In this document: positions 42,026-64,000 of the stretch, in pieces
How positions within the stretch are numbered: position 1 is the first letter of the stretch
Layout of the letters: each line of letters begins with the position of its first letter
Assembly (NCBI GenBank): GCA_002269645.1
Contig: NIVC01002859.1
Location: 70,616-134,615 of the forward strand
Source of the DNA: Macrostomum lignano
Lineage: Eukaryota
Direction: 5' to 3'
DNA: 64,000 nucleotides
Notes under the pieces: model-generated
Seen by the model: only the letters and a program-made list of their open reading frames with translations
Told to the model about the DNA's origin: nothing
Database searches by the model: none
Position numbers and translations under genes: made by a program

Positions 42026-43029
42026 GGGGGGTGTTGCATAGAATCGATAAGTCGAAGTTTACAAGTGACAAGTTGACAAGTTACAAGTAAACCGTGAAGT
42101 CCGTTGCATAGACGCTTTACAAACAAGCATTTGACAATTGACAAGTTACAAGTTACAAGTCCCGTTACGAGTGGTTCGTTGCATAGAATGTATAAGTTGA
42201 CAAGTTTTTCTGCTATTCGCGAGTGACAAGTTGCGTAGTAAACTCTGACCCCTCAAGCTTACTTAAAACTTACAAGCTGTCAAAGTCGTTGGCCCAAGTT
42301 TGACTGACTCAGCGTTATGTTCTATGACGAGTTGTCCGATGAGGATTCCGACGCATCTGCGCCCGGCAAAAAGCGACCGCGTACATTCAAGGACGGGATC
42401 AACTTTGACCTCGATGTGGCCTATGGTGATCATCAATCTAGGTTTCGACTTCGCGAGGAACACATTGACGAGCTTTGCACCCTAATTGGAGCTGACCTCG
42501 AACATTCAACGGGTTTTAACTTCGCCCTGACCCCGTTGCAGCAGATCCGAGTTGCGCTCCGTTATCTCGCCACAGGGGCGAATTTCTCTGCGATTGGCGA
42601 CGCTCATGGTGTGCACAAGTCAACTGTGAGTAAGGCTCTGCATCGTTTTGTCTCTTTTCCAAACCTGGTGAAGTTGCCGGAAGATCAAGCCCAGATGCTG
42701 CAGTTGACACACGAGTTCCGAGACAGATGCCATGTGTTGTCGGCTGCATTGACGGCACGCACGTCAGGATACGCAAGCCACACGAGAACCCGGACCAGTT
42801 CATCAACCGTCACGGCTACGCGTCGATCAACGCCATGCTTACTTGCGAATGCGATGCTCGCTACCGTTTTCTGTACGTGTCGGCCAAATGTCCGGGTGCC
42901 GTCAACGACGCCCGGGTGTTTCGTATGAGCTCACTTCAAGATCTGCTTGCCGCGGGTTGGCGCCCGTTCCCCAACGGATATCTCCTCGGTGAGAGCGGCT
43001 ACCCGAATAGAAACTATATACTGTTGTGA
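42026..43029 (+). mobile_element. Truncated PIF/Harbinger element (5' end + frameshifted HARBI1-type transposase)
   Basis: Putative TIR GGGGGGTGTTGCATAGAATC and GACAAGTTACAAGT subterminal repeats. Motifs ALRYLATG, VHKSTVS, GCIDGTHV, KCPGAVNDARVF, GESGY; truncated shortly after GESGY. Confidence 0.85.
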
Positions 43030-43379
43030 GCCCCGTCCTCCGGAGCAACGCCTACAGCTTTAACCTGTCGGGAAGCTGCGACCCCCAGGTTCCCAGTCAG
43101 AGCTCCCGTCCCGCGCCCTAGGGAGAAGCAGAAAAAGGACAGTAACTCGCGAACACGAACTTACACACCGTAGCCGATGCAGTTCACCGTGCACTTTTTA
43201 TGGTAGATCGATGAGTCGTTTTAGTCAATAGCCAACGGAGGCGGACCAACGCGCGCAAGGGAGGAGTCTGCCCTCCAGACAGCGACTATATATTTTTCAT
43301 TGGTCCTACGCGTACATGAATATAACTTAAGAACAAATGTACGGTACAGCAGGGGAGGTGGGGCGGGGTGGCGTGATCG

Positions 43380-44364: not shown

Positions 44365-44600
44365 CAGTCGTGCAGCACAGCCTGCAACAGTGCGAGCAGC
44401 CGCTCATTGACGCTCTTGCTGAGGCTCAAGCGGGACTCAAGCTCCTTGTCAATGAAGTAAACCTGCCAGCCGTGAGGCAGATCCCTGGCGATTTTCCTTC
44501 AGCGATGTGAGGTGCAGAACGGAACAGAACGGCTCCCCCTTCCAGAGCAAGGCGTGGCAGTGCTGGCATGGCTTGCTCATGCGGCCGAGCTGATGAGCCT
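44365..44600 (-). pseudogene. Helitron RepHel N-terminal fragments
   Basis: LGRMSKPCQHCHALLWKGEPF (Zn-finger-like) and QVYFID...ERLLALLQAVLHD in different frames. Confidence 0.6.
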
Positions 44601-44740
44601 GGGGTTCCGGCATGGCTGAGGCATCGGCTCTCTGGAGGACGGATAAACTCTTTGTTTGATACCAGAATAGACAAAATAAATTAACGATAGGGTTTGAAAT
44701 GATGTACAGTTCGGCATACCCAGCATCATCATCGGAAAAC

Positions 44741-44966
44741 TTAGCAGCTGGGGTGGCAGGCAATGGACCGATACGCCGAGGAAATATCAACTTTGGCCAT
44801 GAAGTGACCTGGCCGAAGAAGACGCACGAAATCCTCGACAGACGCAAAACGCAGCTTGCGGTCGGCGGTGAAACAGTCGTTGAGAGACGCATTATGCGGG
44901 ACGGAGCAGTCGTGAATGAGTCTGACGCCACCAGAAGATTTGCGAATAGCCCCAAGCGGGCTCACC
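44741..44966 (-). pseudogene. DIRS/Ngaro-type reverse transcriptase fragment
   Basis: VSPLGAIRKSSGGVRLIHDCS...SLND...MAKVDISSAYRSI. Confidence 0.85.
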
Positions 44967-45787
44967 AAGGTTTAAGAGAGCTGAGTAGAAAGACAGCAGA
45001 TTTGATTGCTTGCATCTTTCATTTACGCAAACAAAATCGAAATGGCTGACGCAGAGCCAACTACAATGGCAGAAGTTCTGCCTCCTCTATTTAACTACGG
45101 AGCTATGCCGAATGGTGAGATTTCAGGAGTAACATCCGGCGAGTTCGACTTGATTTGCACGTCATTCGATCATGCCCAAGGTCATTAGACAGTCGAGATG
45201 CAGCGAACCGCTATAGATTCTCCGAGAAAAGCTGCTAGAGGCTTTCGCCATCTTCTTGAGTTTATGAAGAGCGTCAGTGAGAAAGCAGGCGGCCTTACTA
45301 AGGTGTACACCGACCGCTGCATATGGTAGGTAGTTTGACCTGTCCACCATATTCATGTGTCTCTGTGAACACATTTGAATCTAGACAAATCAGTTGCCAA
45401 CTTTTCTTAAACTGCAGAGTAACTAGAGCGTGCCACCTGGATGCCTGTGGCCAGACTATCCAGGAGATCTTGCTCATCACTGGGCGAAAGTGTGAGCGAA
45501 CTGTTAAGCGCTACTTATCGAGGCGACGTGATCGCAGTTTGTATAGGGCATCTCTGGCTGTGGATCAGGCGCTGAATCATACAGTTTCCGAAACTAATGT
45601 CAATAAGATCGTTAAGCTAGCTCGTCCAAAATCCAATCACAATAAGCGAGGCTACGATGGAGGAATGTGCGGATGTTTATCAAGAGCCTATCCAGACCGA
45701 CGGCGCACTACGTGTGCAGGCTGCTCCGTCAAAGAAGATGAAAGTGACCATTGGCGGCAGTCGCAATCTGATCGATATTCTTTTTGA
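44967..45787 (+). pseudogene. Crypton-like tyrosine recombinase relic with a 92-bp intron (45326-45417); also at 50598, 56228, 61861
   Basis: FMKSVSEKAGGLTKVYTDRCI tg|gtagg...ctgcag|a VTRACHL...ITGRKCERTVKRY (cf. YTNHCLR...TGH...Y). The upstream EPTT...SGEF segment resembles the N-terminal part. Confidence 0.7.
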
Positions 45788-46255
45788 GTGACGTTTCTGT
45801 GTAGGCCTGGTATTAACTGATTAACATACGATTTCTTTGTTGAACAGTTTTTGATGTTTTTCTAACATAAAAAAATAAAATTTACCCTTTGTTATTGTTT
45901 AAATTGCGTTGCGTGTTAATGTCCAAAATGACATTAACACGCATCCCACGCGCGTGTTATTGTCACCAAAAGTGCATAGCAATGGTCTATGGCCGATCTT
46001 ACAGTTGTATCTAAGTGAGAATATAGCTCGATCGGTATTAAAAATACCTATAAAAATACTTTTATAGGTACTAAGTATAAATAAAGTGTTAATCTCCGAC
46101 TTCTTCGATACGTAACACTGGCGACGATTCCGATAGAACCCCTAGAAACAGATGGAGTGACCCGATGGCTCCAACGCTTCGATGCTACCGTGAAAGTAAA
46201 AAAATGGGCGGAGGATTTGCTAAAGTACGCGTTTGGTTTCCTTTTTGGTTTGGTT

Positions 46256-46960
46256 TGGCGGAACGTTTCGTGCGGACAATTAAGGAGGCCATCAAAGCAA
46301 ACGGACTCAGTCAAGCAGTTATCGATCGCTACCTGTTGTTCTATCGAGCATCTGGTGGGAAGAGCAGAGCATCACCCGCAGAACTGCTGTTCGGCAGAAA
46401 GATCCGAGCACCACTGCTCTCCAATAGGCCAACCTGGGTACCCGGCGAGCATCTAATCTACAAAACCGACCGACGGGCTCAAGAAGCTTCACTAGTTTGC
46501 CCAACGGGTTCAAACATGGCCACTATCAAGGTGGGGCCCGATCTGTACAAGAAGGCCCACCTGGATCAACTCCAGAGGCATAGTCCCATGCAAGTCGATA
46601 GTGAAGCAGCAGAGATCAACACCGAGGCTGACGCAGACCAAGCCGCCGGGGCGCGAGCGTCGGACAGCAGTCAGAACGTCAGCAGAAGCTCCTGTGTCAT
46701 TTCTGAAGACTTACAGCCGCTACCACCACCCCCCGAGGACTGCGGAACACAGCCCTCACAGCAGCATCAACAGCTGCTGACGCCTGGTCGGCTGGAACTG
46801 ACGCCTGAGGAGTTGGGCCCCAGGAGAAGTCGCCGTCTGTGTGGGAAGTCCCGCGTCAACTACAAGGTTAGAATGTGCAAGTTCATTTTGTAAAAGAAGG
46901 GAGGTGTTGCATACTAGCCTTAAGTATAGAGGCAGAGTTTTATTTATTATTATTGCTACG
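46256..46960 (+). pseudogene. Ty3/Gypsy integrase C-terminal fragment + PPT + LTR start (all four copies)
   Basis: AERFVRTIK...YR...SPAELLFGRKIR...RRSRR; PPT AAAAGAAGGGAGG (46892-46904) then TGT. Confidence 0.88.
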
Positions 46961-47169
46961 TACGAATAGCCATGTCGAGCCATAGACTCTAATGAAAAGC
47001 TATGGCTACAGGTCGTGAAGCAATCCAAGTCGATGAGCTTGGGGATAATAAAACGAGAAAGATCAGAGCTGATCATATTTAAGACGAGCCAGACTCGCAT
47101 ACCATCGCTACAATCATCGTGTGTGGCTTCTTCAAGACATAACACTGCGAGATATGCTCTTGCAACCAC

Positions 47170-47782
47170 AGAGTCATTCCTTTGCCCGACATGGTGATAT
47201 CCTCGCTCTGAAGCTGGTTGACAGGCGAAGCTCAGGAACAAAGACTGTCTATCTGTTGGACTCCTCTTCAACAGCTGCCAGCTCTTTAGTTAGCCGGGTA
47301 CTACGCGGTGGTGTGGAGCAGCAGCTGCTGAAGCCCAACTCGGTGTTGCAATATAATCAGAACATGGGAGGTGTGGATCAGATGCAGCCGAGCCTTACAT
47401 CCGCATGTCGCCGAACACATAAATGGTTCGTAAAGCTGGCGGTGTTTCTGCTACAGCAACTGTTTCGCAACTCATGGATTGTGTACCGACATCTAGGTGG
47501 ATCCATGAGCTTTCTCAACTACACTGAAAGGTGTGTAAAGCACTTGATTGAAAGCAGTGGGAATGGTCGATCCAGAGTTAAGCGTCAGGCTCTTCAAGCG
47601 ACATCCATCACCGGCTGGAAAAGCTACCCGCTACCGCGGCACAAGAACGGCCTACCAAGCGTTGCCGAGTTTGTTACCAGCGCAGACTGAAAAAGCGGAC
47701 CGTCTACTTCAGCCAAGGCTGTGACGGTCAGCCTGGGCTTTGCCTGGAGCCGTGTTTCTTTGAGTGGCACTCGACTAACTGA
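47170..47782 (+). pseudogene. piggyBac transposase C-terminal fragment (also 52801-53413, 58431-59043)
   Basis: KPNSVLQYNQNMGGVDQ...RRTHKWFVKL, then a frameshift to the Cys-rich KRCRVCY...GLCLEPCFFEWH*. Confidence 0.9.
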
Positions 47783-47913
47783 TTGCTGGCGTTTTGCTGA
47801 AACTGTAATCGAACTGCTGCTAACATTCTTTTTATTCACTTACATGCAGCTTCATTTGCCCATGAAGGCAACAGAGAGTGCTCGAAGCGATGCAGGCAAA
47901 ATAACTCAGTACT

Positions 47914-48294
47914 GTGGATATTGTTGACCTGACAAGCCAAATCGGACAAGTAAAGGACTTCGTTGCAGGTCAGGCTTCAGTCGTAAAGTCCGCAGGCAGC
48001 CTGTCTACGACCACTTCAAGCGGTGCTTGCGAGTCGCATGCTGAAATCCACCACGGTGACCACAAGCACCAAAGCTCGCATCACTATTGTCGCTACTGTG
48101 GAAAGACCCACGCCGCTGGAAAATGCTCGGCCTTCCGACAGCGGTGCTGCAAATCTAGCAAGCTCGACCATTTCGCTTTCGTATGTCGTTCCACCCGATC
48201 AAAGCCCGTGCACAATGTGGAAGGGACATGGTCCGACACCACTGAGAGACCAAGCAACGACAAGAGCACCGATATTCTACATCGATGTGGATAA
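47914..48294 (+). pseudogene. Gypsy gag zinc-knuckle fragment (also 53545-53925, 59175-59555)
   Basis: CRYCGKTHAAGKCSAFRQRCCKSSKLDHFAFVCRS. Confidence 0.8.
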
Positions 48295-48299
48295 CGTGC

Positions 48300-49031
48300 T
48301 GCAAGTACCTGGTAGTCCAAGAGACTTTTTGGCTCACTATCGGTGTCGTGAGACGCTAGCTGTCCGGATTGCAGCATGGCATACATGATTTTAGCATTGG
48401 CAGAAATCCATTGGCCGACTGTCACAGAGTCTACAGATTTTGGTCTACCGCTCTTGAGATTCTGCTTAGCTGTCTCACCCTGCGCAAGAAGCTCGTCAAC
48501 CTGGCCAGGGGCATCAATGAAGTCGCAAATACGGAGCAGCCGCCCGGATGTAACTCTAGCGTTGCTGGGAGCAAAAATAGCAGCATCAAGTTCACCATCA
48601 TTGGACCACCTATCAGACTCAGCGCAAGCAGACTGGCTCAAAAATTCTGGTAGCTTACCGCGATTATCTGGTGCCTTATCCACCGACCGTCGCAGCTCCG
48701 CCTCTTCTTTCTGCAGCCTTAGCAGTTCAATGCGCCGTCGGGTGAGCTCGATCTCCTCATCCAGAGCCGCGCCACCCAAAGAGGTGCCACCCCCCTTGGA
48801 CCGCCGGCTGCTCCCTCCATCGGACGAGCCGTCAGAATCCCTCGGTGGCTCCCTGTGGGAAGTCCTGTTCGCGGCGTCAGCAGCTAGACGCTCGTTGAGA
48901 ATCGCGTCGCACAGACGAGTACGTAGGGCAGCCTTGCTACCTTTTGCTGGCAATTTGCGCGCTTGCAATGCCGTCTTTAGTTGAGGCACGCTCAGATCGG
49001 TGACTGATTGCAGCTGACTAGAGGTGGCCAT
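48300..49031 (-). pseudogene. SAP-domain DIRS/Ngaro-type gag (ORF1), 3'-truncated (frameshifted in copy 2)
   Basis: LSVPQLKTALQARKLPAKGSKAALRTRL (SAP); LRICDFI...VTVGQWISANAKIM...LLDY. Confidence 0.7.
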
Positions 49032-49238
49032 ATTGATTGTGGCTAAGAAAAAAAATCTGAGCAAACACGAACGCACGGCGAACAAGCGGAGGACCGGACT
49101 AAATATGAAATCAAGCTAGCACCCCGCGACCCCCGCCCCCCGCAGCACACGCCACCCCGCATGCACCCGCCCCAGCCAAGCGAGCCCCTCCCCCGCAGTT
49201 TAAACGCCCTTACCACCAACACAGTGGCAAGGGTAACA

Positions 49239-50552
49239 TTACATTGCATTGCTGATTTGGTCTCGAAGTTGATGGCCTCTCCTTTGTCTTTGCTGTTCCC
49301 GTTGATTGGCGTTGTAATTAACTAGTTCTGGCTCCGGATCATCCCATTCTGCTGCGAGATGCTCAGGAAGATCATCATGAGGATCGTTCTGGGTGCGAGC
49401 GAAATTGTGTAGCTTACAACAGGTCACAATTAATGTTGGTACACGGTCTAGTGGTACGCGTAGGATGCAACCAACGCAGTTGAAACGGCGCTTTAAAATT
49501 CCGAATATCTGCTCGATTCGAACTCTCGTTCGGCTGAGTTCGCGATTGAATATTCTCTGCCGGCCATCTGGGTTTTGATATGGAGTGAGTAGAAAATCGC
49601 AGAGTCGGTATCAAGAATCTCCGACAAGATAGCCCTCCCATTGGGCGTCTAGAAGCGATCCAAAAAGAAAACTGTTGCGAAATATTCTCGAGTCATGGAC
49701 TGAACCAGGCCATTGAGCAGTTATTTCGAGAAAGAAGTATCTCGCATCGCAGACTGCTTGGACTTTAATAGAGTGGTAGTTTTTACGATTAATGAATTCA
49801 TCTGGAAAGTTCTCATTAGATGGCCTTTGAATTCGTACATGCGTACAGTCGATAGCACCGATTACATCTGCCAGTTGACCAATTTGATTAAACCCCGTTG
49901 ACACTCGCTTCCGCTCAACACCTGGCTCTGGATAGCGGATGTTATTCAAGCGGAGATTCAGTATCCTGACCACTCTCCAGTAGCAGCGGGACATGGTGCT
50001 TTGGTCGATACCTCCAAGAGCAAACAGGTTCTGCTGAAAGCTTCCAGTGCCGAGATAAGATAGTGTCAGGCACAGCTGTAGCATGGGAGTCAGGCTTCTG
50101 TTACGCATTGTCGTCCGTTCGAGATCTGTCTCGACAAGCTCCACAAGTGATAGAAGTGATCTAGGTTCGAACCGAAACAGTCTTTTAATTTCAACCTCCG
50201 AGAATTGCTGAAGTGGCTCCAACCGATCACGAAATATGCGTTGTCGATGGAGGTCTCGCTGAACTAAATCTATCGCAACCAAAATATTCATTTCTTTCAA
50301 TCGTCTAAGGGCGAAGGCAATGCAAAATTAGCTATCAAGACAGCTCTAGAGCAGGCTAGGTTTTGTCTAGTCCAGACTAACTAGTCAAAGCTTTTATGCA
50401 TACCAAAGTAAGACTAAACTACCATAGACAGAACTAGGGTTGTTTTGTCTATGCTAGACCGGTCTAAATTTGTGTTTCTGCATACCAAATCCGAGTCCAG
50501 ACTAGCTTTTCAAGACCGGACTACCCTAGACAGAGCTTTCTGCATACGGCTC
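49239..50552 (-). mobile_element. Harbinger element 5' end + full-length 353-codon transposase with one in-frame TGA (ORF 49239-50300; also 54869-55930, 60502-61563)
   Basis: GAIDCTHV, WPGSVHDSRIF, GDS*Y, RIEQIFGILKRRF, CCKLHN all lie in one frame. Putative TIR GAGCCGTATGCAGAAAG ends at 50552. Confidence 0.9.
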
Positions 50553-50597
50553 ATTAACATGCACTGTAGTTTTTTGATCCCATAAAGAGGGAGACAG

Positions 50598-53500
50598 AAG
50601 GTTTAAGAGAGCTGAGTAGAAAGACAGCAGATTTGATTGCTTGCATCTTTCATTTACGCAAACAAAATCGAAATGGCTGACGCAGAGCCAACTACAATGG
50701 CAGAAGTTCTGCCTCCTCTATTTAACTACGGAGCTATGCCGAATGGTGAGATTTCAGGAGTAACATCCGGCGAGTTCGACTTGATTTGCACGTCATTCGA
50801 TCATGCCCAAGGTCATTAGACAGTCGAGATGCAGCGAACCGCTATAGATTCTCCGAGAAAAGCTGCTAGAGGCTTTCGCCATCTTCTTGAGTTTATGAAG
50901 AGCGTCAGTGAGAAAGCAGGCGGCCTTACTAAGGTGTACACCGACCGCTGCATATGGTAGGTAGTTTGACCTGTCCACCATATTCATGTGTCTCTGTGAA
51001 CACATTTGAATCTAGACAAATCAGTTGCCAACTTTTCTTAAACTGCAGAGTAACTAGAGCGTGCCACCTGGATGCCTGTGGCCAGACTATCCAGGAGATC
51101 TTGCTCATCACTGGGCGAAAGTGTGAGCGAACTGTTAAGCGCTACTTATCGAGGCGACGTGATCGCAGTTTGTATAGGGCATCTCTGGCTGTGGATCAGG
51201 CGCTGAATCATACAGTTTCCGAAACTAATGTCAATAAGATCGTTAAGCTAGCTCGTCCAAAATCCAATCACAATAAGCGAGGCTACGATGGAGGAATGTG
51301 CGGATGTTTATCAAGAGCCTATCCAGACCGACGGCGCACTACGTGTGCAGGCTGCTCCGTCAAAGAAGATGAAAGTGACCATTGGCGGCAGTCGCAATCT
51401 GATCGATATTCTTTTTGAGTGACGTTTCTGTGTAGGCCTGGTATTAACTGATTAACATACGATTTCTTTGTTGAACAGTTTTTGATGTTTTTCTAACATA
51501 AAAAAATAAAATTTACCCTTTGTTATTGTTTAAATTGCGTTGCGTGTTAATGTCCAAAATGACATTAACACGCATCCCACGCGCGTGTTATTGTCACCAA
51601 AAGTGCATAGCAATGGTCTATGGCCGATCTTACAGTTGTATCTAAGTGAGAATATAGCTCGATCGGTATTAAAAATACCTATAAAAATACTTTTATAGGT
51701 ACTAAGTATAAATAAAGTGTTAATCTCCGACTTCTTCGATACGTAACACTGGCGACGATTCCGATAGAACCCCTAGAAACAGATGGAGTGACCCGATGGC
51801 TCCAACGCTTCGATGCTACCGTGAAAGTAAAAAAATGGGCGGAGGATTTGCTAAAGTACGCGTTTGGTTTCCTTTTTGGTTTGGTTTGGCGGAACGTTTC
51901 GTGCGGACAATTAAGGAGGCCATCAAAGCAAACGGACTCAGTCAAGCAGTTATCGATCGCTACCTGTTGTTCTATCGAGCATCTGGTGGGAAGAGCAGAG
52001 CATCACCCGCAGAACTGCTGTTCGGCAGAAAGATCCGAGCACCACTGCTCTCCAATAGGCCAACCTGGGTACCCGGCGAGCATCTAATCTACAAAACCGA
52101 CCGACGGGCTCAAGAAGCTTCACTAGTTTGCCCAACGGGTTCAAACATGGCCACTATCAAGGTGGGGCCCGATCTGTACAAGAAGGCCCACCTGGATCAA
52201 CTCCAGAGGCATAGTCCCATGCAAGTCGATAGTGAAGCAGCAGAGATCAACACCGAGGCTGACGCAGACCAAGCCGCCGGGGCGCGAGCGTCGGACAGCA
52301 GTCAGAACGTCAGCAGAAGCTCCTGTGTCATTTCTGAAGACTTACAGCCGCTACCACCACCCCCCGAGGACTGCGGAACACAGCCCTCACAGCAGCATCA
52401 ACAGCTGCTGACGCCTGGTCGGCTGGAACTGACGCCTGAGGAGTTGGGCCCCAGGAGAAGTCGCCGTCTGTGTGGGAAGTCCCGCGTCAACTACAAGGTT
52501 AGAATGTGCAAGTTCATTTTGTAAAAGAAGGGAGGTGTTGCATACTAGCCTTAAGTATAGAGGCAGAGTTTTATTTATTATTATTGCTACGTACGAATAG
52601 CCATGTCGAGCCATAGACTCTAATGAAAAGCTATGGCTACAGGTCGTGAAGCAATCCAAGTCGATGAGCTTGGGGATAATAAAACGAGAAAGATCAGAGC
52701 TGATCATATTTAAGACGAGCCAGACTCGCATACCATCGCTACAATCATCGTGTGTGGCTTCTTCAAGACATAACACTGCGAGATATGCTCTTGCAACCAC
52801 AGAGTCATTCCTTTGCCCGACATGGTGATATCCTCGCTCTGAAGCTGGTTGACAGGCGAAGCTCAGGAACAAAGACTGTCTATCTGTTGGACTCCTCTTC
52901 AACAGCTGCCAGCTCTTTAGTTAGCCGGGTACTACGCGGTGGTGTGGAGCAGCAGCTGCTGAAGCCCAACTCGGTGTTGCAATATAATCAGAACATGGGA
53001 GGTGTGGATCAGATGCAGCCGAGCCTTACATCCGCATGTCGCCGAACACATAAATGGTTCGTAAAGCTGGCGGTGTTTCTGCTACAGCAACTGTTTCGCA
53101 ACTCATGGATTGTGTACCGACATCTAGGTGGATCCATGAGCTTTCTCAACTACACTGAAAGGTGTGTAAAGCACTTGATTGAAAGCAGTGGGAATGGTCG
53201 ATCCAGAGTTAAGCGTCAGGCTCTTCAAGCGACATCCATCACCGGCTGGAAAAGCTACCCGCTACCGCGGCACAAGAACGGCCTACCAAGCGTTGCCGAG
53301 TTTGTTACCAGCGCAGACTGAAAAAGCGGACCGTCTACTTCAGCCAAGGCTGTGACGGTCAGCCTGGGCTTTGCCTGGAGCCGTGTTTCTTTGAGTGGCA
53401 CTCGACTAACTGATTGCTGGCGTTTTGCTGAAACTGTAATCGAACTGCTGCTAACATTCTTTTTATTCACTTACATGCAGCTTCATTTGCCCATGAAGGC

Positions 53501-56227
53501 AACAGAGAGTGCTCGAAGCGATGCAGGCAAAATAACTCAGTACTGTGGATATTGTTGACCTGACAAGCCAAATCGGACAAGTAAAGGACTTCGTTGCAGG
53601 TCAGGCTTCAGTCGTAAAGTCCGCAGGCAGCCTGTCTACGACCACTTCAAGCGGTGCTTGCGAGTCGCATGCTGAAATCCACCACGGTGACCACAAGCAC
53701 CAAAGCTCGCATCACTATTGTCGCTACTGTGGAAAGACCCACGCCGCTGGAAAATGCTCGGCCTTCCGACAGCGGTGCTGCAAATCTAGCAAGCTCGACC
53801 ATTTCGCTTTCGTATGTCGTTCCACCCGATCAAAGCCCGTGCACAATGTGGAAGGGACATGGTCCGACACCACTGAGAGACCAAGCAACGACAAGAGCAC
53901 CGATATTCTACATCGATGTGGATAACGTGCTGCAAGTACCTGGTAGTCCAAGAGACTTTTTGGCTCACTATCGGTGTCGTGAGACGCTAGCTGTCCGGAT
54001 TGCAGCATGGCATACATGATTTTAGCATTGGCAGAAATCCATTGGCCGACTGTCACAGAGTCTACAGATTTTGGTCTACCGCTCTTGAGATTCTGCTTAG
54101 CTGTCTCACCCTGCGCAAGAAGCTCGTCAACCTGGCCAGGGGCATCAATGAAGTCGCAAATACGGAGCAGCCGCCCGGATGTAACTCTAGCGTTGCTGGG
54201 AGCAAAAATAGCAGCATCAAGTTCACCATCATTGGACCACCTATCAGACTCAGCGCAAGCAGACTGGCTCAAAAATTCTGGTAGCTTACCGCGATTATCT
54301 GGTGCCTTATCCACCGACCGTCGCAGCTCCGCCTCTTCTTTCTGCAGCCTTAGCAGTTCAATGCGCCGTCGGGTGAGCTCGATCTCCTCATCCAGAGCCG
54401 CGCCACCCAAAGAGGTGCCACCCCCTTGGACCGCCGGCTGCTCCCTCCATCGGACGAGCCGTCAGAATCCCTCGGTGGCTCCCTGTGGGAAGTCCTGTTC
54501 GCGGCGTCAGCAGCTAGACGCTCGTTGAGAATCGCGTCGCACAGACGAGTACGTAGGGCAGCCTTGCTACCTTTTGCTGGCAATTTGCGCGCTTGCAATG
54601 CCGTCTTTAGTTGAGGCACGCTCAGATCGGTGACTGATTGCAGCTGACTAGAGGTGGCCATATTGATTGTGGCTAAGAAAAAAAATCTGAGCAAACACGA
54701 ACGCACGGCGAACAAGCGGAGGACCGGACTAAATATGAAATCAAGCTAGCACCCCGCGACCCCCGCCCCCCGCAGCACACGCCACCCCGCATGCACCCGC
54801 CCCAGCCAAGCGAGCCCCTCCCCCGCAGTTTAAACGCCCTTACCACCAACACAGTGGCAAGGGTAACATTACATTGCATTGCTGATTTGGTCTCGAAGTT
54901 GATGGCCTCTCCTTTGTCTTTGCTGTTCCCGTTGATTGGCGTTGTAATTAACTAGTTCTGGCTCCGGATCATCCCATTCTGCTGCGAGATGCTCAGGAAG
55001 ATCATCATGAGGATCGTTCTGGGTGCGAGCGAAATTGTGTAGCTTACAACAGGTCACAATTAATGTTGGTACACGGTCTAGTGGTACGCGTAGGATGCAA
55101 CCAACGCAGTTGAAACGGCGCTTTAAAATTCCGAATATCTGCTCGATTCGAACTCTCGTTCGGCTGAGTTCGCGATTGAATATTCTCTGCCGGCCATCTG
55201 GGTTTTGATATGGAGTGAGTAGAAAATCGCAGAGTCGGTATCAAGAATCTCCGACAAGATAGCCCTCCCATTGGGCGTCTAGAAGCGATCCAAAAAGAAA
55301 ACTGTTGCGAAATATTCTCGAGTCATGGACTGAACCAGGCCATTGAGCAGTTATTTCGAGAAAGAAGTATCTCGCATCGCAGACTGCTTGGACTTTAATA
55401 GAGTGGTAGTTTTTACGATTAATGAATTCATCTGGAAAGTTCTCATTAGATGGCCTTTGAATTCGTACATGCGTACAGTCGATAGCACCGATTACATCTG
55501 CCAGTTGACCAATTTGATTAAACCCCGTTGACACTCGCTTCCGCTCAACACCTGGCTCTGGATAGCGGATGTTATTCAAGCGGAGATTCAGTATCCTGAC
55601 CACTCTCCAGTAGCAGCGGGACATGGTGCTTTGGTCGATACCTCCAAGAGCAAACAGGTTCTGCTGAAAGCTTCCAGTGTCGAGATAAGATAGTGTCAGG
55701 CACAGCTGTAGCATGGGAGTCAGGCTTCTGTTACGCATTGTCGTCCGTTCGAGATCTGTCTCGACAAGCTCCACAAGTGATAGAAGTGATCTAGGTTCGA
55801 ACCGAAACAGTCTTTTAATTTCAACCTCCGAGAATTGCTGAAGTGGCTCCAACCGATCACGAAATATGCGTTGTCGATGGAGGTCTCGCTGAACTAAATC
55901 TATCGCAACCAAAATATTCATTTCTTTCAATCGTCTAAGGGCGAAGGCAATGCAAAATTAGCTATCAAGACAGCTCTAGAGCAGGCTAGGTTTTGTCTAG
56001 TCCAGACTAACTAGTCAAAGCTTTTATGCATACCAAAGTAAGACTAAACTACCATAGACAGAACTAGGGTTGTTTTGTCTATGCTAGACCGGTCTAAATT
56101 TGTGTTTCTGCATACCAAATCCGAGTCCAGACTAGCTTTTCAAGACCGGACTACCCTAGACAGAGCTTTCTGCATACGGCTCATTAACATGCACTGTAGT
56201 TTTTTGATCCCATAAAGAGGGAGACAG
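50598..56227. repeat. 5.63-kb tandem unit, copy 2 (5630 bp)
   Basis: Near-identical to copy 1; 1-bp deletion in a C-run near 54420. Confidence 0.97.
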
Positions 56228-59200
56228 AAGGTTTAAGAGAGCTGAGTAGAAAGACAGCAGATTTGATTGCTTGCATCTTTCATTTACGCAAACAAAATCG
56301 AAATGGCTGACGCAGAGCCAACTACAATGGCAGAAGTTCTGCCTCCTCTATTTAACTACGGAGCTATGCCGAATGGTGAGATTTCAGGAGTAACATCCGG
56401 CGAGTTCGACTTGATTTGCACGTCATTCGATCATGCCCAAGGTCATTAGACAGTCGAGATGCAGCGAACCGCTATAGATTCTCCGAGAAAAGCTGCTAGA
56501 GGCTTTCGCCATCTTCTTGAGTTTATGAAGAGCGTCAGTGAGAAAGCAGGCGGCCTTACTAAGGTGTACACCGACCGCTGCATATGGTAGGTAGTTTGAC
56601 CTGTCCACCATATTCATGTGTCTCTGTGAACACATTTGAATCTAGACAAATCAGTTGCCAACTTTTCTTAAACTGCAGAGTAACTAGAGCGTGCCACCTG
56701 GATGCCTGTGGCCAGACTATCCAGGAGATCTTGCTCATCACTGGGCGAAAGTGTGAGCGAACTGTTAAGCGCTACTTATCGAGGCGACGTGATCGCAGTT
56801 TGTATAGGGCATCTCTGGCTGTGGATCAGGCGCTGAATCATACAGTTTCCGAAACTAATGTCAATAAGATCGTTAAGCTAGCTCGTCCAAAATCCAATCA
56901 CAATAAGCGAGGCTACGATGGAGGAATGTGCGGATGTTTATCAAGAGCCTATCCAGACCGACGGCGCACTACGTGTGCAGGCTGCTCCGTCAAAGAAGAT
57001 GAAAGTGACCATTGGCGGCAGTCGCAATCTGATCGATATTCTTTTTGAGTGACGTTTCTGTGTAGGCCTGGTATTAACTGATTAACATACGATTTCTTTG
57101 TTGAACAGTTTTTGATGTTTTTCTAACATAAAAAAATAAAATTTACCCTTTGTTATTGTTTAAATTGCGTTGCGTGTTAATGTCCAAAATGACATTAACA
57201 CGCATCCCACGCGCGTGTTATTGTCACCAAAAGTGCATAGCAATGGTCTATGGCCGATCTTACAGTTGTATCTAAGTGAGAATATAGCTCGATCGGTATT
57301 AAAAATACCTATAAAAATACTTTTATAGGTACTAAGTATAAATAAAGTGTTAATCTCCGACTTCTTCGATACGTAACACTGGCGACGATTCCGATAGAAC
57401 CCCTAGAAACAGATGGAGTGACCCGATGGCTCCAACGCTTCGATGCTACCGTGAAAGTAAAAAAATGGGCGGAGGATTTGCTAAAGTACGCGTTTGGTTT
57501 CCTTTTTGGTTTGGTTTGGCGGAACGTTTCGTGCGGACAATTAAGGAGGCCATCAAAGCAAACGGACTCAGTCAAGCAGTTATCGATCGCTACCTGTTGT
57601 TCTATCGAGCATCTGGTGGGAAGAGCAGAGCATCACCCGCAGAACTGCTGTTCGGCAGAAAGATCCGAGCACCACTGCTCTCCAATAGGCCAACCTGGGT
57701 ACCCGGCGAGCATCTAATCTACAAAACCGACCGACGGGCTCAAGAAGCTTCACTAGTTTGCCCAACGGGTTCAAACATGGCCACTATCAAGGTGGGGCCC
57801 GATCTGTACAAGAAGGCCCACCTGGATCAACTCCAGAGGCATAGTCCCATGCAAGTCGATAGTGAAGCAGCAGAGATCAACACCGAGGCTGACGCAGACC
57901 AAGCCGCCGGGGCGCGAGCGTCGGACAGCAGTCAGAACGTCAGCAGAAGCTCCTGTGTCATTTCTGAAGACTTACAGCCGCTACCACCACCCCCCGAGGA
58001 CTGCGGAACACAGCCCTCACAGCAGCATCAACAGCTGCTGACGCCTGGTCGGCTGGAACTGACGCCTGAGGAGTTGGGCCCCAGGAGAAGTCGCCGTCTG
58101 TGTGGGAAGTCCCGCGTCAACTACAAGGTTAGAATGTGCAAGTTCATTTTGTAAAAGAAGGGAGGTGTTGCATACTAGCCTTAAGTATAGAGGCAGAGTT
58201 TTATTTATTATTATTGCTACGTACGAATAGCCATGTCGAGCCATAGACTCTAATGAAAAGCTATGGCTACAGGTCGTGAAGCAATCCAAGTCGATGAGCT
58301 TGGGGATAATAAAACGAGAAAGATCAGAGCTGATCATATTTAAGACGAGCCAGACTCGCATACCATCGCTACAATCATCGTGTGTGGCTTCTTCAAGACA
58401 TAACACTGCGAGATATGCTCTTGCAACCACAGAGTCATTCCTTTGCCCGACATGGTGATATCCTCGCTCTGAAGCTGGTTGACAGGCGAAGCTCAGGAAC
58501 AAAGACTGTCTATCTGTTGGACTCCTCTTCAACAGCTGCCAGCTCTTTAGTTAGCCGGGTACTACGCGGTGGTGTGGAGCAGCAGCTGCTGAAGCCCAAC
58601 TCGGTGTTGCAATATAATCAGAACATGGGAGGTGTGGATCAGATGCAGCCGAGCCTTACATCCGCATGTCGCCGAACACATAAATGGTTCGTAAAGCTGG
58701 CGGTGTTTCTGCTACAGCAACTGTTTCGCAACTCATGGATTGTGTACCGACATCTAGGTGGATCCATGAGCTTTCTCAACTACACTGAAAGGTGTGTAAA
58801 GCACTTGATTGAAAGCAGTGGGAATGGTCGATCCAGAGTTAAGCGTCAGGCTCTTCAAGCGACATCCATCACCGGCTGGAAAAGCTACCCGCTACCGCGG
58901 CACAAGAACGGCCTACCAAGCGTTGCCGAGTTTGTTACCAGCGCAGACTGAAAAAGCGGACCGTCTACTTCAGCCAAGGCTGTGACGGTCAGCCTGGGCT
59001 TTGCCTGGAGCCGTGTTTCTTTGAGTGGCACTCGACTAACTGATTGCTGGCGTTTTGCTGAAACTGTAATCGAACTGCTGCTAACATTCTTTTTATTCAC
59101 TTACATGCAGCTTCATTTGCCCATGAAGGCAACAGAGAGTGCTCGAAGCGATGCAGGCAAAATAACTCAGTACTGTGGATATTGTTGACCTGACAAGCCA

Positions 59201-61860
59201 AATCGGACAAGTAAAGGACTTCGTTGCAGGTCAGGCTTCAGTCGTAAAGTCCGCAGGCAGCCTGTCTACGACCACTTCAAGCGGTGCTTGCGAGTCGCAT
59301 GCTGAAATCCACCACGGTGACCACAAGCACCAAAGCTCGCATCACTATTGTCGCTACTGTGGAAAGACCCACGCCGCTGGAAAATGCTCGGCCTTCCGAC
59401 AGCGGTGCTGCAAATCTAGCAAGCTCGACCATTTCGCTTTCGTATGTCGTTCCACCCGATCAAAGCCCGTGCACAATGTGGAAGGGACATGGTCCGACAC
59501 CACTGAGAGACCAAGCAACGACAAGAGCACCGATATTCTACATCGATGTGGATAACGTGCTGCAAGTACCTGGTAGTCCAAGAGACTTTTTGGCTCACTA
59601 TCGGTGTCGTGAGACGCTAGCTGTCCGGATTGCAGCATGGCATACATGATTTTAGCATTGGCAGAAATCCATTGGCCGACTGTCACAGAGTCTACAGATT
59701 TTGGTCTACCGCTCTTGAGATTCTGCTTAGCTGTCTCACCCTGCGCAAGAAGCTCGTCAACCTGGCCAGGGGCATCAATGAAGTCGCAAATACGGAGCAG
59801 CCGCCCGGATGTAACTCTAGCGTTGCTGGGAGCAAAAATAGCAGCATCAAGTTCACCATCATTGGACCACCTATCAGACTCAGCGCAAGCAGACTGGCTC
59901 AAAAATTCTGGTAGCTTACCGCGATTATCTGGTGCCTTATCCACCGACCGTCGCAGCTCCGCCTCTTCTTTCTGCAGCCTTAGCAGTTCAATGCGCCGTC
60001 GGGTGAGCTCGATCTCCTCATCCAGAGCCGCGCCACCCAAAGAGGTGCCACCCCCCTTGGACCGCCGGCTGCTCCCTCCATCGGACGAGCCGTCAGAATC
60101 CCTCGGTGGCTCCCTGTGGGAAGTCCTGTTCGCGGCGTCAGCAGCTAGACGCTCGTTGAGAATCGCGTCGCACAGACGAGTACGTAGGGCAGCCTTGCTA
60201 CCTTTTGCTGGCAATTTGCGCGCTTGCAATGCCGTCTTTAGTTGAGGCACGCTCAGATCGGTGACTGATTGCAGCTGACTAGAGGTGGCCATATTGATTG
60301 TGGCTAAGAAAAAAAATCTGAGCAAACACGAACGCACGGCGAACAAGCGGAGGACCGGACTAAATATGAAATCAAGCTAGCACCCCCGCGACCCCCCGCC
60401 CCCCGCAGCACACGCCACCCCGCATGCACCCGCCCCAGCCAAGCGAGCCCCTCCCCCGCAGTTTAAACGCCCTTACCACCAACACAGTGGCAAGGGTAAC
60501 ATTACATTGCATTGCTGATTTGGTCTCGAAGTTGATGGCCTCTCCTTTGTCTTTGCTGTTCCCGTTGATTGGCGTTGTAATTAACTAGTTCTGGCTCCGG
60601 ATCATCCCATTCTGCTGCGAGATGCTCAGGAAGATCATCATGAGGATCGTTCTGGGTGCGAGCGAAATTGTGTAGCTTACAACAGGTCACAATTAATGTT
60701 GGTACACGGTCTAGTGGTACGCGTAGGATGCAACCAACGCAGTTGAAACGGCGCTTTAAAATTCCGAATATCTGCTCGATTCGAACTCTCGTTCGGCTGA
60801 GTTCGCGATTGAATATTCTCTGCCGGCCATCTGGGTTTTGATATGGAGTGAGTAGAAAATCGCAGAGTCGGTATCAAGAATCTCCGACAAGATAGCCCTC
60901 CCATTGGGCGTCTAGAAGCGATCCAAAAAGAAAACTGTTGCGAAATATTCTCGAGTCATGGACTGAACCAGGCCATTGAGCAGTTATTTCGAGAAAGAAG
61001 TATCTCGCATCGCAGACTGCTTGGACTTTAATAGAGTGGTAGTTTTTACGATTAATGAATTCATCTGGAAAGTTCTCATTAGATGGCCTTTGAATTCGTA
61101 CATGCGTACAGTCGATAGCACCGATTACATCTGCCAGTTGACCAATTTGATTAAACCCCGTTGACACTCGCTTCCGCTCAACACCTGGCTCTGGATAGCG
61201 GATGTTATTCAAGCGGAGATTCAGTATCCTGACCACTCTCCAGTAGCAGCGGGACATGGTGCTTTGGTCGATACCTCCAAGAGCAAACAGGTTCTGCTGA
61301 AAGCTTCCAGTGTCGAGATAAGATAGTGTCAGGCACAGCTGTAGCATGGGAGTCAGGCTTCTGTTACGCATTGTCGTCCGTTCGAGATCTGTCTCGACAA
61401 GCTCCACAAGTGATAGAAGTGATCTAGGTTCGAACCGAAACAGTCTTTTAATTTCAACCTCCGAGAATTGCTGAAGTGGCTCCAACCGATCACGAAATAT
61501 GCGTTGTCGATGGAGGTCTCGCTGAACTAAATCTATCGCAACCAAAATATTCATTTCTTTCAATCGTCTAAGGGCGAAGGCAATGCAAAATTAGCTATCA
61601 AGACAGCTCTAGAGCAGGCTAGGTTTTGTCTAGTCCAGACTAACTAGTCAAAGCTTTTATGCATACCAAAGTAAGACTAAACTACCATAGACAGAACTAG
61701 GGTTGTTTTGTCTATGCTAGACCGGTCTAAATTTGTGTTTCTGCATACCAAATCCGAGTCCAGACTAGCTTTTCAAGACCGGACTACCCTAGACAGAGCT
61801 TTCTGCATACGGCTCATTAACATGCACTGTAGTTTTTTGATCCCATAAAGAGGGAGACAG
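56228..61860. repeat. 5.63-kb tandem unit, copy 3 (5633 bp)
   Basis: Near-identical; extra Cs in C-runs near 60385-60400. Confidence 0.97.
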
Positions 61861-64000
61861 AAGGTTTAAGAGAGCTGAGTAGAAAGACAGCAGATTTGAT
61901 TGCTTGCATCTTTCATTTACGCAAACAAAATCGAAATGGCTGACGCAGAGCCAACTACAATGGCAGAAGTTCTGCCTCCTCTATTTAACTACGGAGCTAT
62001 GCCGAATGGTGAGATTTCAGGAGTAACATCCGGCGAGTTCGACTTGATTTGCACGTCATTCGATCATGCCCAAGGTCATTAGACAGTCGAGATGCAGCGA
62101 ACCGCTATAGATTCTCCGAGAAAAGCTGCTAGAGGCTTTCGCCATCTTCTTGAGTTTATGAAGAGCGTCAGTGAGAAAGCAGGCGGCCTTACTAAGGTGT
62201 ACACCGACCGCTGCATATGGTAGGTAGTTTGACCTGTCCACCATATTCATGTGTCTCTGTGAACACATTTGAATCTAGACAAATCAGTTGCCAACTTTTC
62301 TTAAACTGCAGAGTAACTAGAGCGTGCCACCTGGATGCCTGTGGCCAGACTATCCAGGAGATCTTGCTCATCACTGGGCGAAAGTGTGAGCGAACTGTTA
62401 AGCGCTACTTATCGAGGCGACGTGATCGCAGTTTGTATAGGGCATCTCTGGCTGTGGATCAGGCGCTGAATCATACAGTTTCCGAAACTAATGTCAATAA
62501 GATCGTTAAGCTAGCTCGTCCAAAATCCAATCACAATAAGCGAGGCTACGATGGAGGAATGTGCGGATGTTTATCAAGAGCCTATCCAGACCGACGGCGC
62601 ACTACGTGTGCAGGCTGCTCCGTCAAAGAAGATGAAAGTGACCATTGGCGGCAGTCGCAATCTGATCGATATTCTTTTTGAGTGACGTTTCTGTGTAGGC
62701 CTGGTATTAACTGATTAACATACGATTTCTTTGTTGAACAGTTTTTGATGTTTTTCTAACATAAAAAATAAAATTTACCCTTTGCTATTGTTTAAATTGC
62801 GTTGCGTGTTAATGTCCAAAATGACATTAACACGCATCCCACGCGCGTGTTATTGTCACCAAAAGTGCATAGCAATGGTCTATGGCCGATCTTACAGTTG
62901 TATCTAAGTGAGAATATAGCTCGATCGGTATTAAAAATACCTATAAAAATACTTTTATAGGTACTAAGTATAAATAAAGTGTTAATCTCCGACTTCTTCG
63001 ATACGTAACACTGGCGACGATTCCGATAGAACCCCTAGAAACAGATGGAGTGACCCGATGGCTCCAACGCTTCGATGCTACCGTGAAAGTAAAAAAATGG
63101 GCGGAGGATTTGCTAAAGTACGCGTTTGGTTTCCTTTTTGGTTTGGTTTGGCGGAACGTTTCGTGCGGACAATTAAGGAGGCCATCAAAGCAAACGGACT
63201 CAGTCAAGCAGTTATCGATCGCTACCTGTTGTTCTATCGAGCATCTGGTGGGAAGAGCAGAGCATCACCCGCAGAACTGCTGTTCGGCAGAAAGATCCGA
63301 GCACCACTGCTCTCCAATAGGCCAACCTGGGTACCCGGCGAGCATCTAATCTACAAAACCGACCGACGGGCTCAAGAAGCTTCACTAGTTTGCCCAACGG
63401 GTTCAAACATGGCCACTATCAAGGTGGGGCCCGATCTGTACAAGAAGGCCACCTGGATCAACTCCAGAGGCATAGTCCCATGCAAGTCGATAGTGAAGCA
63501 GCAGAGATCAACACCGAGGCTGACGCAGACCAAGCCGCCGGGGCGCGAGCGTCGGACAGCAGTCAGAACGTCAGCAGAAGCTCCTGTGTCATTTCTGAAG
63601 ACTTACAGCCGCTACACACCCCCCGAGGACTGCGGAACACAGCCCTCACAGCAGCATCAACAGCTGCTGACGCCTGGTCGGCTGGAACTGACGCCTGAGG
63701 AGTTGGGCCCCAGGAGAAGTCGCCGTCTGTGTGGGAAGTCCCGCGTCAACTACAAGGTTAGAATGTGCAAGTTCATTTTGTAAAAGAAGGGAGGTGTTGC
63801 ATACTAGCCTTAAGTATAGAGGCAGAGTTTTATTTATTATTATTGCTACGTACGAATAGCCATGTCGAGCCATAGACTCTAATGAAAACGCTATGGCTAC
63901 AGGTCGTGAAGCAATCCAAGTCGATGAGCTTGGGGATAATAAAACGAGAAAGATCAGAGCTGATCATATTTAAGACGAGCCAGACTCGCATACCATCGCT
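61861..64000. repeat. 5.63-kb tandem unit, copy 4 (partial, continues past window end)
   Basis: Same sequence with several 1-bp indels. Confidence 0.95.

What the first reader, a model, noticed from the sequence alone, without database searches (positions are those of the whole stretch)
44967..64000. 5.63-kb megasatellite whose unit is a catalogue of fragments from five TE superfamilies
Each unit concatenates Crypton YR, a short gag-like piece, Gypsy IN+PPT+LTR start, piggyBac, Gypsy gag, DIRS gag and Harbinger with almost no spacer. Every piece is disabled, and no host gene or structural RNA was recognised, yet at least 3.4 near-identical copies are in tandem. This looks like a TE-sequence library amplified as a block: a candidate piRNA/siRNA master locus, or an eccDNA/rolling-circle-derived array. 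The function is inference.
Basis: partly seen in the sequence, partly recalled or inferred. Interest (0 to 1): 0.85.

Follow-up and report, generated by a model that had tools for sequence, protein, structure and literature searches.

The report
Young tandem repeat of transposon debris
A 5.63-kb block of broken transposon pieces has very recently been copied head-to-tail at least 3.4 times in an animal genome; this is a known, usually functionless kind of repeat, and nothing in the sequence points to a dedicated small-RNA "library".

Summary
The tandem array is real. From 44967 to the window end there are 3.38 head-to-tail copies with a period of 5630-5633 bp. They differ at only 11 alignment columns, mostly homopolymer lengths.

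The unit is a patchwork of transposon pieces. Tools confirm three:
- a piggyBac transposase C-terminus (+);
- a 3'-truncated DIRS-like gag with a SAP domain (-);
- a Harbinger 5' end plus a full 350-codon transposase with one in-frame TGA (-).

An LTR-retrotransposon integrase tail and a CCHC knuckle are readable by eye only. The "Crypton YR" could not be confirmed. About 1.9 kb has no assignment at all.

The left flank is the same kind of patchwork, with a second Harbinger fragment and a DIRS RT fragment flush with the array edge. The unit has no terminal repeats, no long inverted repeats, no Rfam or tRNA hit, and its pieces lie on both strands.

Best reading: a young composite macrosatellite made by tandem duplication of a piece of a "transposon graveyard", a kind already described. 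piRNA production, eccDNA origin and assembly artefact remain untested. None is supported by the sequence. Interest is low to moderate.

The parts
44967..64000 (.). Tandem array of 3.38 copies of a 5.63-kb unit: u1 44967-50597, u2 50598-56227, u3 56228-61860, u4 61861-64000 (cut by the window end). Every feature listed below for u1 recurs at +5631 and +11261; those in the first 2.1 kb of the unit also recur at +16894.
   Evidence: >99.8% identity, sharp left edge, 11 variant columns
45302..45560 (+). Unconfirmed.
   Evidence: By eye only. No hit.
46200..46520 (+). Probable C-terminal part of an LTR-retrotransposon integrase ('GLAERFVRTIKEAI...YLLFYRAS..SPAELLFGRKIRAPL'), inside a 266-aa open frame at 46093-46890.
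   Evidence: Direct reading plus general knowledge of integrase motifs. No Pfam, PDB or IMG/VR support.
47163..47770 (+). C-terminal third of a piggyBac transposase: DDE_Tnp_1_7 profile 251-349 at 47163-47477 and zf-Tnp_2 at 47651-47770, in different frames (at least one frameshift). The N-terminal two thirds are absent.
47905..48291 (+). Gag-like open frame with an exact CX2CX4HX4C knuckle (CRYCGKTHAAGKC, about 48088-48126).
   Evidence: Direct reading. Pfam gave no hit.
48295..49031 (-). 3'-truncated gag of a DIRS-like (tyrosine-recombinase) retrotransposon. It has a SAP domain (48900-49001), a coiled coil and the 'GQWISANAKIM' region, and lacks the C-terminal ~115 aa with the CCCH finger. 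The 330-aa ORF 48093-49085 runs on as antisense read-through of the CCHC piece.
   Evidence: Pfam SAP. 13 weak relatives, most with a SAP domain. One of them, P0127, is followed by RVT_1 and Phage_integrase ORFs in Macrostomum lignano. Local phmmer E=6e-11.
49239..50291 (-). Harbinger (PIF/HARBI1-type) transposase CDS: 350 codons, no indels, and a single in-frame TGA at 49611-49613 replacing the G of GDSGY. The stop is present in all three complete copies.
   Evidence: Pfam DDE_Tnp_4 1-158/158, E=6e-35. 85% aa / 83% nt identity over the CDS to P0001. dN/dS 0.10, dS 0.77.
50292..50553 (-). Harbinger 5' subterminal region with three copies of GGTATGCAKAAA and palindromic CTAGTCYGGWCTAG motifs. 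It aligns with L001 up to that contig's first base. No matching 3' terminus exists in the unit, so the element is cut right after its stop codon.
44750..44971 (-). Left flank: a 74-aa DIRS-like reverse-transcriptase fragment (RT aa 103-176 of the M. lignano element, 55% identity). Its truncated N-terminal end lies within ~5 nt of the array's left edge.
   Evidence: E=3e-20 / 4e-21
42317..43035 (+). Left flank: truncated Harbinger transposase of a different family (HTH_23 plus DDE_Tnp_4 positions 1-95/158; 35-58% aa identity to the unit's Harbinger).

Best explanation
This is a young composite macrosatellite. A 5.63-kb segment of ordinary 'transposon graveyard' DNA was duplicated in tandem and then expanded to at least 3.4 copies.

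The segment is a patchwork of truncated pieces from a piggyBac, a DIRS-like element, a Harbinger and probably an LTR retrotransposon. The inferred mechanism is unequal sister-chromatid exchange or replication slippage/template switching, with homogenisation by the same processes.

The order of events is partly shown:
1. The TEs inserted and were truncated.
2. The Harbinger gene acquired its stop codon.
3. The block was then amplified, because the same truncations and the same stop occur in every copy, and the copies differ by <0.2%.

The array is most likely selectively neutral. It has no coding or structural-RNA function of its own. At most it is a passive source of TE-derived transcripts.
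For: - Exact period and >99.8% identity, with copy-specific variants and a more divergent fourth copy.
- All TE pieces are truncated or stopped identically in every copy.
- No LTRs, TIRs or internal repeats at the unit ends, so the unit is not itself a mobile element.
- The flank is the same kind of TE patchwork.
- The region is extremely prone to tandem repetition, with 14 separate minisatellite arrays in the 41 kb to the left.
- No Rfam or tRNA hit.
- The DIRS gag in the unit and the DIRS RT in the flank have the same orientation and the order expected of one disrupted element. This weakly suggests that flank and unit were contiguous before the duplication.
- The kind is described in the literature: composite satDNA monomers from TE graveyards (PMC12628747) and composite elements in T2T-CHM13.
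Against: - The left edge of the array coincides to within ~5 nt with the end of the RT fragment. A random in-situ duplication breakpoint would do that only ~1-2% of the time. Insertion of a pre-formed array or circle would explain it better.
- The right end of the array is outside the window.
- No read-level data are available, so a mis-assembly cannot be excluded.
- Neutrality is a default assumption, not a demonstration.
- Several fragments keep unusually long open frames (205-312 aa). The mosaic is therefore not old debris, and its assembly process is not understood.
Confidence: 0.65

Rival explanations
1. Functional piRNA/siRNA source locus. The block of TE fragments is transcribed and processed into small RNAs, and amplification raised the dosage. 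Precedents from my own knowledge, not tested here, are Su(Ste) on the Drosophila Y and satellite-derived piRNAs in mosquitoes.
For: - TE-fragment-rich content with pieces of at least 3 superfamilies.
- piRNA clusters are known to be enriched in TE relics (PMC12628747).
- The host-gene content of the window looks metazoan (Recep_L_domain, SBF2, EF-1beta), so a PIWI pathway is plausible.
Against: - No small-RNA data are available.
- The TE pieces are on both strands, so the array is not a flamenco-type uni-strand cluster.
- There are no long inverted repeats for hairpin siRNA.
- Identical copies add no sequence diversity.
- The same mosaic continues outside the array.
- No DNA-level copies of these TE families occur elsewhere in the window. 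The closest public Harbinger is only 81% identical in DNA, so no targets are demonstrated.
Confidence: 0.12
2. The array was made outside the chromosome, as a circular 5.63-kb DNA (eccDNA or a recombinase product) amplified by rolling-circle replication. It was then inserted as a concatemer into a DIRS retrotransposon copy.
For: - The DIRS RT fragment is cut within ~5 nt of the array's left edge, as expected if the array interrupts a DIRS copy.
- There is no microhomology and no duplicated flank at the left junction.
Against: - The RT fragment is only 222 bp and is truncated on its other side too, so it may just be one more patch.
- The DIRS gag inside the unit has the orientation and order expected if unit and flank were once one element.
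- No intact recombinase, Rep protein or replication origin is recognisable in the unit.
- The right junction is not visible.
Confidence: 0.1
3. Assembly artefact. A single-copy or differently sized repeat was over-expanded or mis-joined by a long-read assembler.
For: - Most differences between copies are homopolymer-length changes typical of long-read consensus errors.
- The internal junction was not found in an independent public collection.
Against: - Copy-specific substitutions exist: T/C at 62785, C/T at 50050, and a CCAC->CA change at 63615-63616.
- There is a gradient of divergence, with u4 at 7 differences in 2.1 kb against 4 in 5.6 kb among u1-u3.
- The window contains no Ns or gaps.
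- The left junction is clean.
Confidence: 0.1
4. The unit is itself a composite mobile element (Helitron-like, Pack-type or a large TIR element carrying captured fragments) that inserted repeatedly or replicated in tandem.
For: - Fragments of several loci lined up with few recognisable spacers resemble gene-capturing elements.
- The unit contains a nearly intact Harbinger gene with its 5' terminus.
Against: - No TIR, LTR or other repeat links the two ends of the unit.
- The Harbinger 5' terminal sequence has no inverted partner anywhere in the window.
- The unit ends do not match Helitron TC...CTRR termini (direct reading).
- No other copy of any part of the unit occurs in the left 45 kb.
Confidence: 0.03

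Closest known systems
Composite satellite DNA monomers derived from 'TE graveyards' (Satovic-Vuksic, Majcen & Plohl 2025, PMC12628747)
   Same: The monomer shows successive stretches of similarity to several unrelated TE families. It arises by tandemisation of a shuffled, truncated TE-rich segment, and its function is open.
   Different: The unit here is much longer (5.63 kb) and much younger. Its pieces are still readable as proteins, and one carries a complete 350-codon ORF with a single stop. Only 3.4 copies are seen, and the left side lies 7-8 kb from host-gene-like ORFs rather than in obvious heterochromatin.
'Composite elements' of the human T2T-CHM13 assembly (Hoyt et al., bioRxiv 10.1101/2021.07.12.451456), e.g. 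5SRNA_Comp, LMtRNA, TELO-composite
   Same: These are kilobase-scale repeating units built of TEs plus other subunits and found as tandem arrays. They expand and contract by unequal crossing-over with concerted evolution.
   Different: The human composites often include RNA genes, protein-coding annotations or satellite subunits. None was found here. The organism and TE families also differ.
Germline piRNA clusters (e.g. Drosophila flamenco/42AB; Su(Ste) tandem repeats) - comparison from my own knowledge, not tested here
   Same: They are dense collections of dead TE fragments, and some contain tandemly duplicated blocks.
   Different: piRNA clusters are defined by small-RNA output, which cannot be tested here. 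They are usually tens to hundreds of kb of diverse, non-identical fragments, whereas here one 5.6-kb block is repeated. The unit shows no strand bias.
DIRS-like tyrosine-recombinase retrotransposon of Macrostomum lignano (L002; NIVC01002140.1, record positions 109317-113093)
   Same: The unit's SAP-domain ORF and the flank's RT fragment are homologous to this element's gag and RT.
   Different: Only a 3'-truncated gag (about 740 bp) and a 222-bp RT piece are present here. No RNase H or YR of this family was found. Identity is 30-55%, so this is a different family or host.

Membership tests
Composite TE-derived macrosatellite | Head-to-tail copies of a unit of about 1 kb or more with a constant period | tested here: met
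   3.38 copies, period 5630-5633 bp
Composite TE-derived macrosatellite | The unit contains consecutive stretches homologous to several unrelated TE families, none complete or functional | tested here: met
   piggyBac C-terminus, DIRS-like gag and Harbinger with a stop codon. Two or three further pieces are seen by eye only.
Composite TE-derived macrosatellite | It originates from a surrounding TE-fragment-rich region | tested here: met
   The left flank carries a second Harbinger fragment and a DIRS RT fragment. The right flank is outside the window.
Composite TE-derived macrosatellite | Copy number is real and variable among haplotypes or individuals | not testable with these tools
   This needs raw reads or other assemblies. 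The junction was not found in the JGI metagenome contigs.
piRNA cluster | Produces abundant 24-32-nt PIWI-bound RNAs (1U bias, ping-pong or phasing) | not testable with these tools
   No small-RNA data are available
piRNA cluster | Dense in TE fragments | tested here: met
piRNA cluster (uni-strand type) | TE fragments predominantly in one orientation | tested here: not met
   piggyBac and the IN-like and CCHC pieces are on +; the DIRS gag and Harbinger are on -
Hairpin endo-siRNA locus | Long inverted repeat able to form dsRNA | tested here: not met
   The longest inverted repeat in the unit is 31 nt at 74% complementarity
Autonomous or composite mobile element repeated in tandem | Terminal repeats (TIR or LTR) or Helitron termini at the unit ends | tested here: not met
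   Self-BLAST found only a 26-bp palindrome. The Harbinger 5' end has no inverted partner.
Autonomous or composite mobile element repeated in tandem | An intact transposase, recombinase or Rep protein | tested here: not met
   The Harbinger CDS has an in-frame TGA in all copies. The piggyBac piece is only the C-terminal third. No YR was confirmed.
Crypton (claimed component) | Recognisable tyrosine-recombinase domain | tested here: not met
   No hit in the 5.8-billion-protein search, Pfam, PDB or against a DIRS YR. Sensitivity is limited for a degenerate fragment.
eccDNA / rolling-circle-derived array | Both array ends interrupt one pre-existing sequence, and an empty-site allele exists | not testable with these tools
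   The left end abuts a truncated DIRS RT. The right end is outside the window.

The most novel reading that the evidence does not exclude
The array is a dedicated, recently amplified small-RNA (piRNA) source. Alternatively, or in addition, it was seeded by reinsertion of a rolling-circle-amplified 5.63-kb extrachromosomal circle into a DIRS element. In either case the block of still-readable fragments from several TE families was copied as a unit because it is useful for silencing them.
Probability: 0.1. Interest if true: 0.6.

Novelty: new member of a known kind. Interest (0 to 1): 0.22.

Why it matters
If the neutral reading is right, this is one more example of how satellite or macrosatellite DNA is born from transposon debris. 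It is a clean and very young one: the copies are <0.2% diverged, the component pieces are still readable, and one edge can be inspected. Such young arrays are useful for working out the amplification mechanism, in-situ duplication versus reinsertion of a circle.

It would matter more if small-RNA data showed the array is a piRNA source, because that would catch a cluster in the act of expanding by block duplication. Nothing in the sequence argues for that at present.

Tried and rejected
- Homology search of the SAP ORF in the word-indexed 5.8-billion-protein set found nothing. The exhaustive HMMER search was needed to find 13 weak relatives.
- A search with all ORF pieces of 44967-46150 on both strands, looking for the claimed Crypton YR, found nothing. 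Pfam at E<=10, PDB and phmmer against a DIRS YR also found nothing.
- The integrase-like piece got no Pfam, PDB or IMG/VR support. The RT fragment got no PDB hit but was confirmed against L002.
- Exact-protein look-ups meant to identify the source genome or other copies failed for the Q-rich ORF, the Harbinger N-terminal ORF and the SAP ORF.
- Look-ups of P0125 and P0121 gave only short anonymous contigs.
- A literature search for SRR24204725 gave nothing.
- An exact search for the internal junction in the JGI metagenome contigs gave nothing.
- A Harbinger 3' terminus or TIR was searched for and not found.
- I rejected a tandemly amplified functional HARBI1-like gene, because the TGA is present in all three complete copies.
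- I rejected a mobile composite element, because the unit has no terminal structures.
- I rejected a hairpin siRNA locus, because there are no long inverted repeats.
Full report
**1. Observation**

A direct-repeat scan finds families with start-to-start spacing of 5629-5633 bp from 44967 to the window end. Comparing each base with the base 5631 further on shows that the similarity stops abruptly to the left of 44967.

MAFFT alignment of the four units (44967-50597, 50598-56227, 56228-61860, 61861-64000) gives 5634 columns, of which only 11 differ. Eight of these are length changes in A or C runs or adjoining 1-2-bp indels. Two are plain substitutions (T/C at 62785; C/T at 50050). One sits in a small CCAC->CA change. 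The truncated fourth copy carries 7 of the 11 differences in its 2.1 kb.

The array is therefore real in the sequence, far beyond chance, and consists of 3.38 copies. It continues to the window end, so the true copy number is unknown. TRF finds no shorter-period arrays inside it. Rfam (gathering thresholds) and ARAGORN find nothing anywhere in the window.

**2. Anatomy of the unit (coordinates of copy 1)**

*Pieces confirmed by tools*

- **piggyBac.** Six-frame Pfam scans give DDE_Tnp_1_7 profile positions 251-349 of 349 at 47163-47477 (+) and zf-Tnp_2 at 47651-47770 (+), in another frame. This is the C-terminal third of a piggyBac transposase with at least one frameshift.
- **Harbinger.** A complete DDE_Tnp_4 domain (1-158/158, E=6e-35) lies on the minus strand, and a SAP domain lies at 48900-49001 (-).
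  - The Harbinger piece is much more than a fragment. The CDS at 50291-49239 has 350 codons, the same length as its best public relative P0001 (85% aa identity, a Logan contig of SRR24204725).
  - It has no indels and a single in-frame TGA (49611-49613) replacing the G of the GDSGY motif.
  - Differences from P0001's gene fall 35/24/120 on codon positions 1/2/3, with dN/dS = 0.10 and dS = 0.77. The gene was therefore under purifying selection until shortly before it was fixed here.
  - The 262 bp upstream (to 50553) also align with L001, up to that contig's first base. They contain three copies of GGTATGCAKAAA and palindromic CTAG...CTAG motifs, typical of TE subterminal repeats.
  - No inverted partner of this terminus exists in the window, and similarity to L001 stops at the stop codon. 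The element therefore lacks its 3' part.
  - The stop codon is identical in all three complete copies, so amplification came after inactivation.
- **DIRS-like gag.** The SAP-domain ORF (48093-49085, minus strand, 330 aa) is the longest open frame of the unit.
  - The word-indexed protein search found nothing. The exhaustive HMMER search found 13 weak relatives (E=4.5e-7 to 1e-3).
  - Six of the ten scanned with Pfam have an N-terminal SAP domain. Five of the retrieved sequences share its layout: coiled coil, a 'W..GN.rim' region and a C-terminal CCCH-type finger.
- One of them, P0127, lies in Macrostomum lignano assembly GCA_002269645.1. It is followed directly by ORFs with RVT_1 and Phage_integrase domains.
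  - Local phmmer of that gag against all window ORFs gives E=6e-11 for this ORF only.
  - The homology ends at about 48295. The last ~65 codons of the ORF are antisense read-through of the neighbouring piece, and the CCCH finger is missing, so the gag is 3'-truncated.

*Pieces not confirmed by tools*

- An integrase-like tail ('GLAERFVRTIKEAI...SPAELLFGRKIRAPL', about 46200-46520, +) and an exact CX2CX4HX4C knuckle (48088-48126, +) are convincing to the eye as LTR-retrotransposon IN and gag pieces. They got no Pfam, PDB or IMG/VR support.
- The claimed Crypton YR (about 45302-45560, +) got no support from any test.
- About 1.9 kb has no assignable homology: 44967-45300, 45560-46150 (which includes a 400-bp stretch of only 35-38% GC at 45800-46199), 46520-47160, 49032-49238 and 50554-50597.
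- Three superfamilies are thus confirmed, a fourth is probable and a fifth is not confirmed. 'Almost no spacer' cannot be upheld.

**3. Surroundings**

- The left flank is the same kind of patchwork. It holds a truncated Harbinger of a different family at 42317-43035 (+). It also holds a 74-aa DIRS-like RT fragment at 44750-44971 (-), which is 55% identical to RT residues 103-176 of the M. lignano element (E=3e-20).
- There is no DNA-level similarity between the unit and the 45 kb to its left.
- Further left lie host-gene-like ORFs: a Ras-family GTPase at 26573-27085, an EF-1beta exon at about 24.3 kb, an SBF2-like ORF at 36237-36773 and a Recep_L_domain ORF at 443-1129. There are also 14 separate minisatellite arrays.
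- The organism looks like a metazoan, but I could not identify it. The closest named Harbinger relatives (~40% identity) are from molluscs and fishes, and no window protein is on record in the public gene index.

**4. What it is and how it arose**

- The unit has no terminal inverted or direct repeats, no internal repeats beyond a 26-bp palindrome, and no intact transposase. It is therefore not a mobile element repeated in tandem.
- It has no long inverted repeat, so it is not a hairpin siRNA locus.
- Its pieces lie on both strands: the IN-like, piggyBac and CCHC pieces on +, the DIRS gag and Harbinger on -. It does not resemble a uni-strand piRNA cluster.
- Its composition is not distinctive relative to the flank.
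- The simplest account is that a segment of a TE graveyard was tandemly duplicated and expanded very recently, or is kept homogeneous by unequal exchange. The time order is shown: truncations and the Harbinger stop first, amplification afterwards. The mechanism is inferred.
- This kind of repeat has been described explicitly. [quoted passage not shown] The T2T-CHM13 repeat annotation lists 19 'composite elements' built of TEs and subunits, found in tandem arrays, that evolve by unequal crossing-over (bioRxiv 10.1101/2021.07.12.451456).

**5. What remains open**

- *The left edge.* The edge of the array coincides within ~5 nt with the truncated end of the RT fragment. In-situ duplication predicts this only by a ~1-2% coincidence. 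Insertion of a pre-formed concatemer or circle into a DIRS copy would explain it, and predicts the missing RT part at the right end, which is outside the window. Against that, the DIRS gag in the unit and the RT in the flank have the same orientation and the order expected of a single disrupted element, which mildly favours prior contiguity of flank and unit. I cannot decide between these two.
- *Assembly artefact.* This cannot be excluded without reads. The homopolymer differences look like long-read errors, but the copy-specific substitutions and the gradient of divergence argue for distinct real copies.
- *Small-RNA production.* This is untestable here. It is compatible with the content but is not indicated by any specific feature.

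**6. Verdict**

The structural observation is correct and was well spotted. The composition is partly confirmed. The functional interpretation is unsupported speculation. The locus is a new member of a known kind, a composite TE-derived macrosatellite, notable only for its youth and for the good preservation of its pieces.

| Measure | Value |
|---|---|
| Interest | 0.22 |
| Probability of the most novel non-excluded reading (expanding piRNA source and/or circle-derived array) | ~0.1 |
| Interest if that reading is true | ~0.6 |

Noticed in passing
window 139-40532: Exceptionally dense minisatellite landscape with 14 separate arrays. Examples are a 21-bp array at 1201-1986, a 16-bp array at 3354-4403, a 23/46-bp array of 2.5 kb at 15781-18264, a 20-bp array at 28233-28803, a 19-bp array at 36903-37381 and an 8-bp AGACAGAC array at 39959-40532. 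The genome region is very prone to tandem repetition.
   Followed up: partly
window 24287-25342: An ORF with an EF-1beta acidic-region match (Pfam EF-1_beta_acid) runs straight into a 39-bp x 17.5 minisatellite (24653-25336, 96% matches). This is probably an exon followed by an intronic minisatellite.
   Followed up: partly
window 33133-35826 (+): An 897-aa open frame that is extremely Q/P-rich contains a 15-bp coding repeat (33873-34190, 'PMPQQ'-like). It has no Pfam domain and no exact match in the public gene index.
   Followed up: partly
window 443-1129 (-), 26573-27085 (+), 36237-36773 (+): Host-gene-like ORFs: Recep_L_domain (insulin/EGF-receptor type), a Ras-family small GTPase and an SBF2/myotubularin-related piece. 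On its left side the array is within ~8 kb of genes and not in a gene desert.
   Followed up: partly
L002 7001-10777 (Macrostomum lignano NIVC01002140.1): A DIRS-like retrotransposon whose first ORF is a SAP-domain / coiled-coil / C-terminal CCCH-finger protein, followed by RVT_1 and Phage_integrase ORFs. Relatives of this 'SAP gag' occur in anonymous metagenome and SRA contigs. A second partial YR copy lies at L002 14554-15102 (-).
   Followed up: partly
window 49239-50553 (-) and L001: The unit's Harbinger and the Logan contig L001 (SRR24204725) differ mostly at third codon positions (dN/dS 0.10, dS 0.77). Their non-coding 5' subterminal region, however, is about 80% identical, with conserved GGTATGCAKAAA and CTAGTCYGGWCTAG motifs. 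These are candidate transposase-binding sites.
   Followed up: partly
window 44452-44961 (-): A 170-aa open frame in the left flank overlaps the RT fragment in another frame. It contains 'CQHCHALLWKGE', reminiscent of the N-terminal Cys motif of Helitron Rep proteins. It has no Pfam support, so the match is probably chance.
   Followed up: partly
window 45800-46199 (and the same stretch in each copy): An AT-rich stretch (35-38% GC) inside the otherwise ~50% GC unit contains short nested palindromes (45905-45965). It has no homology to anything tested.
   Followed up: no
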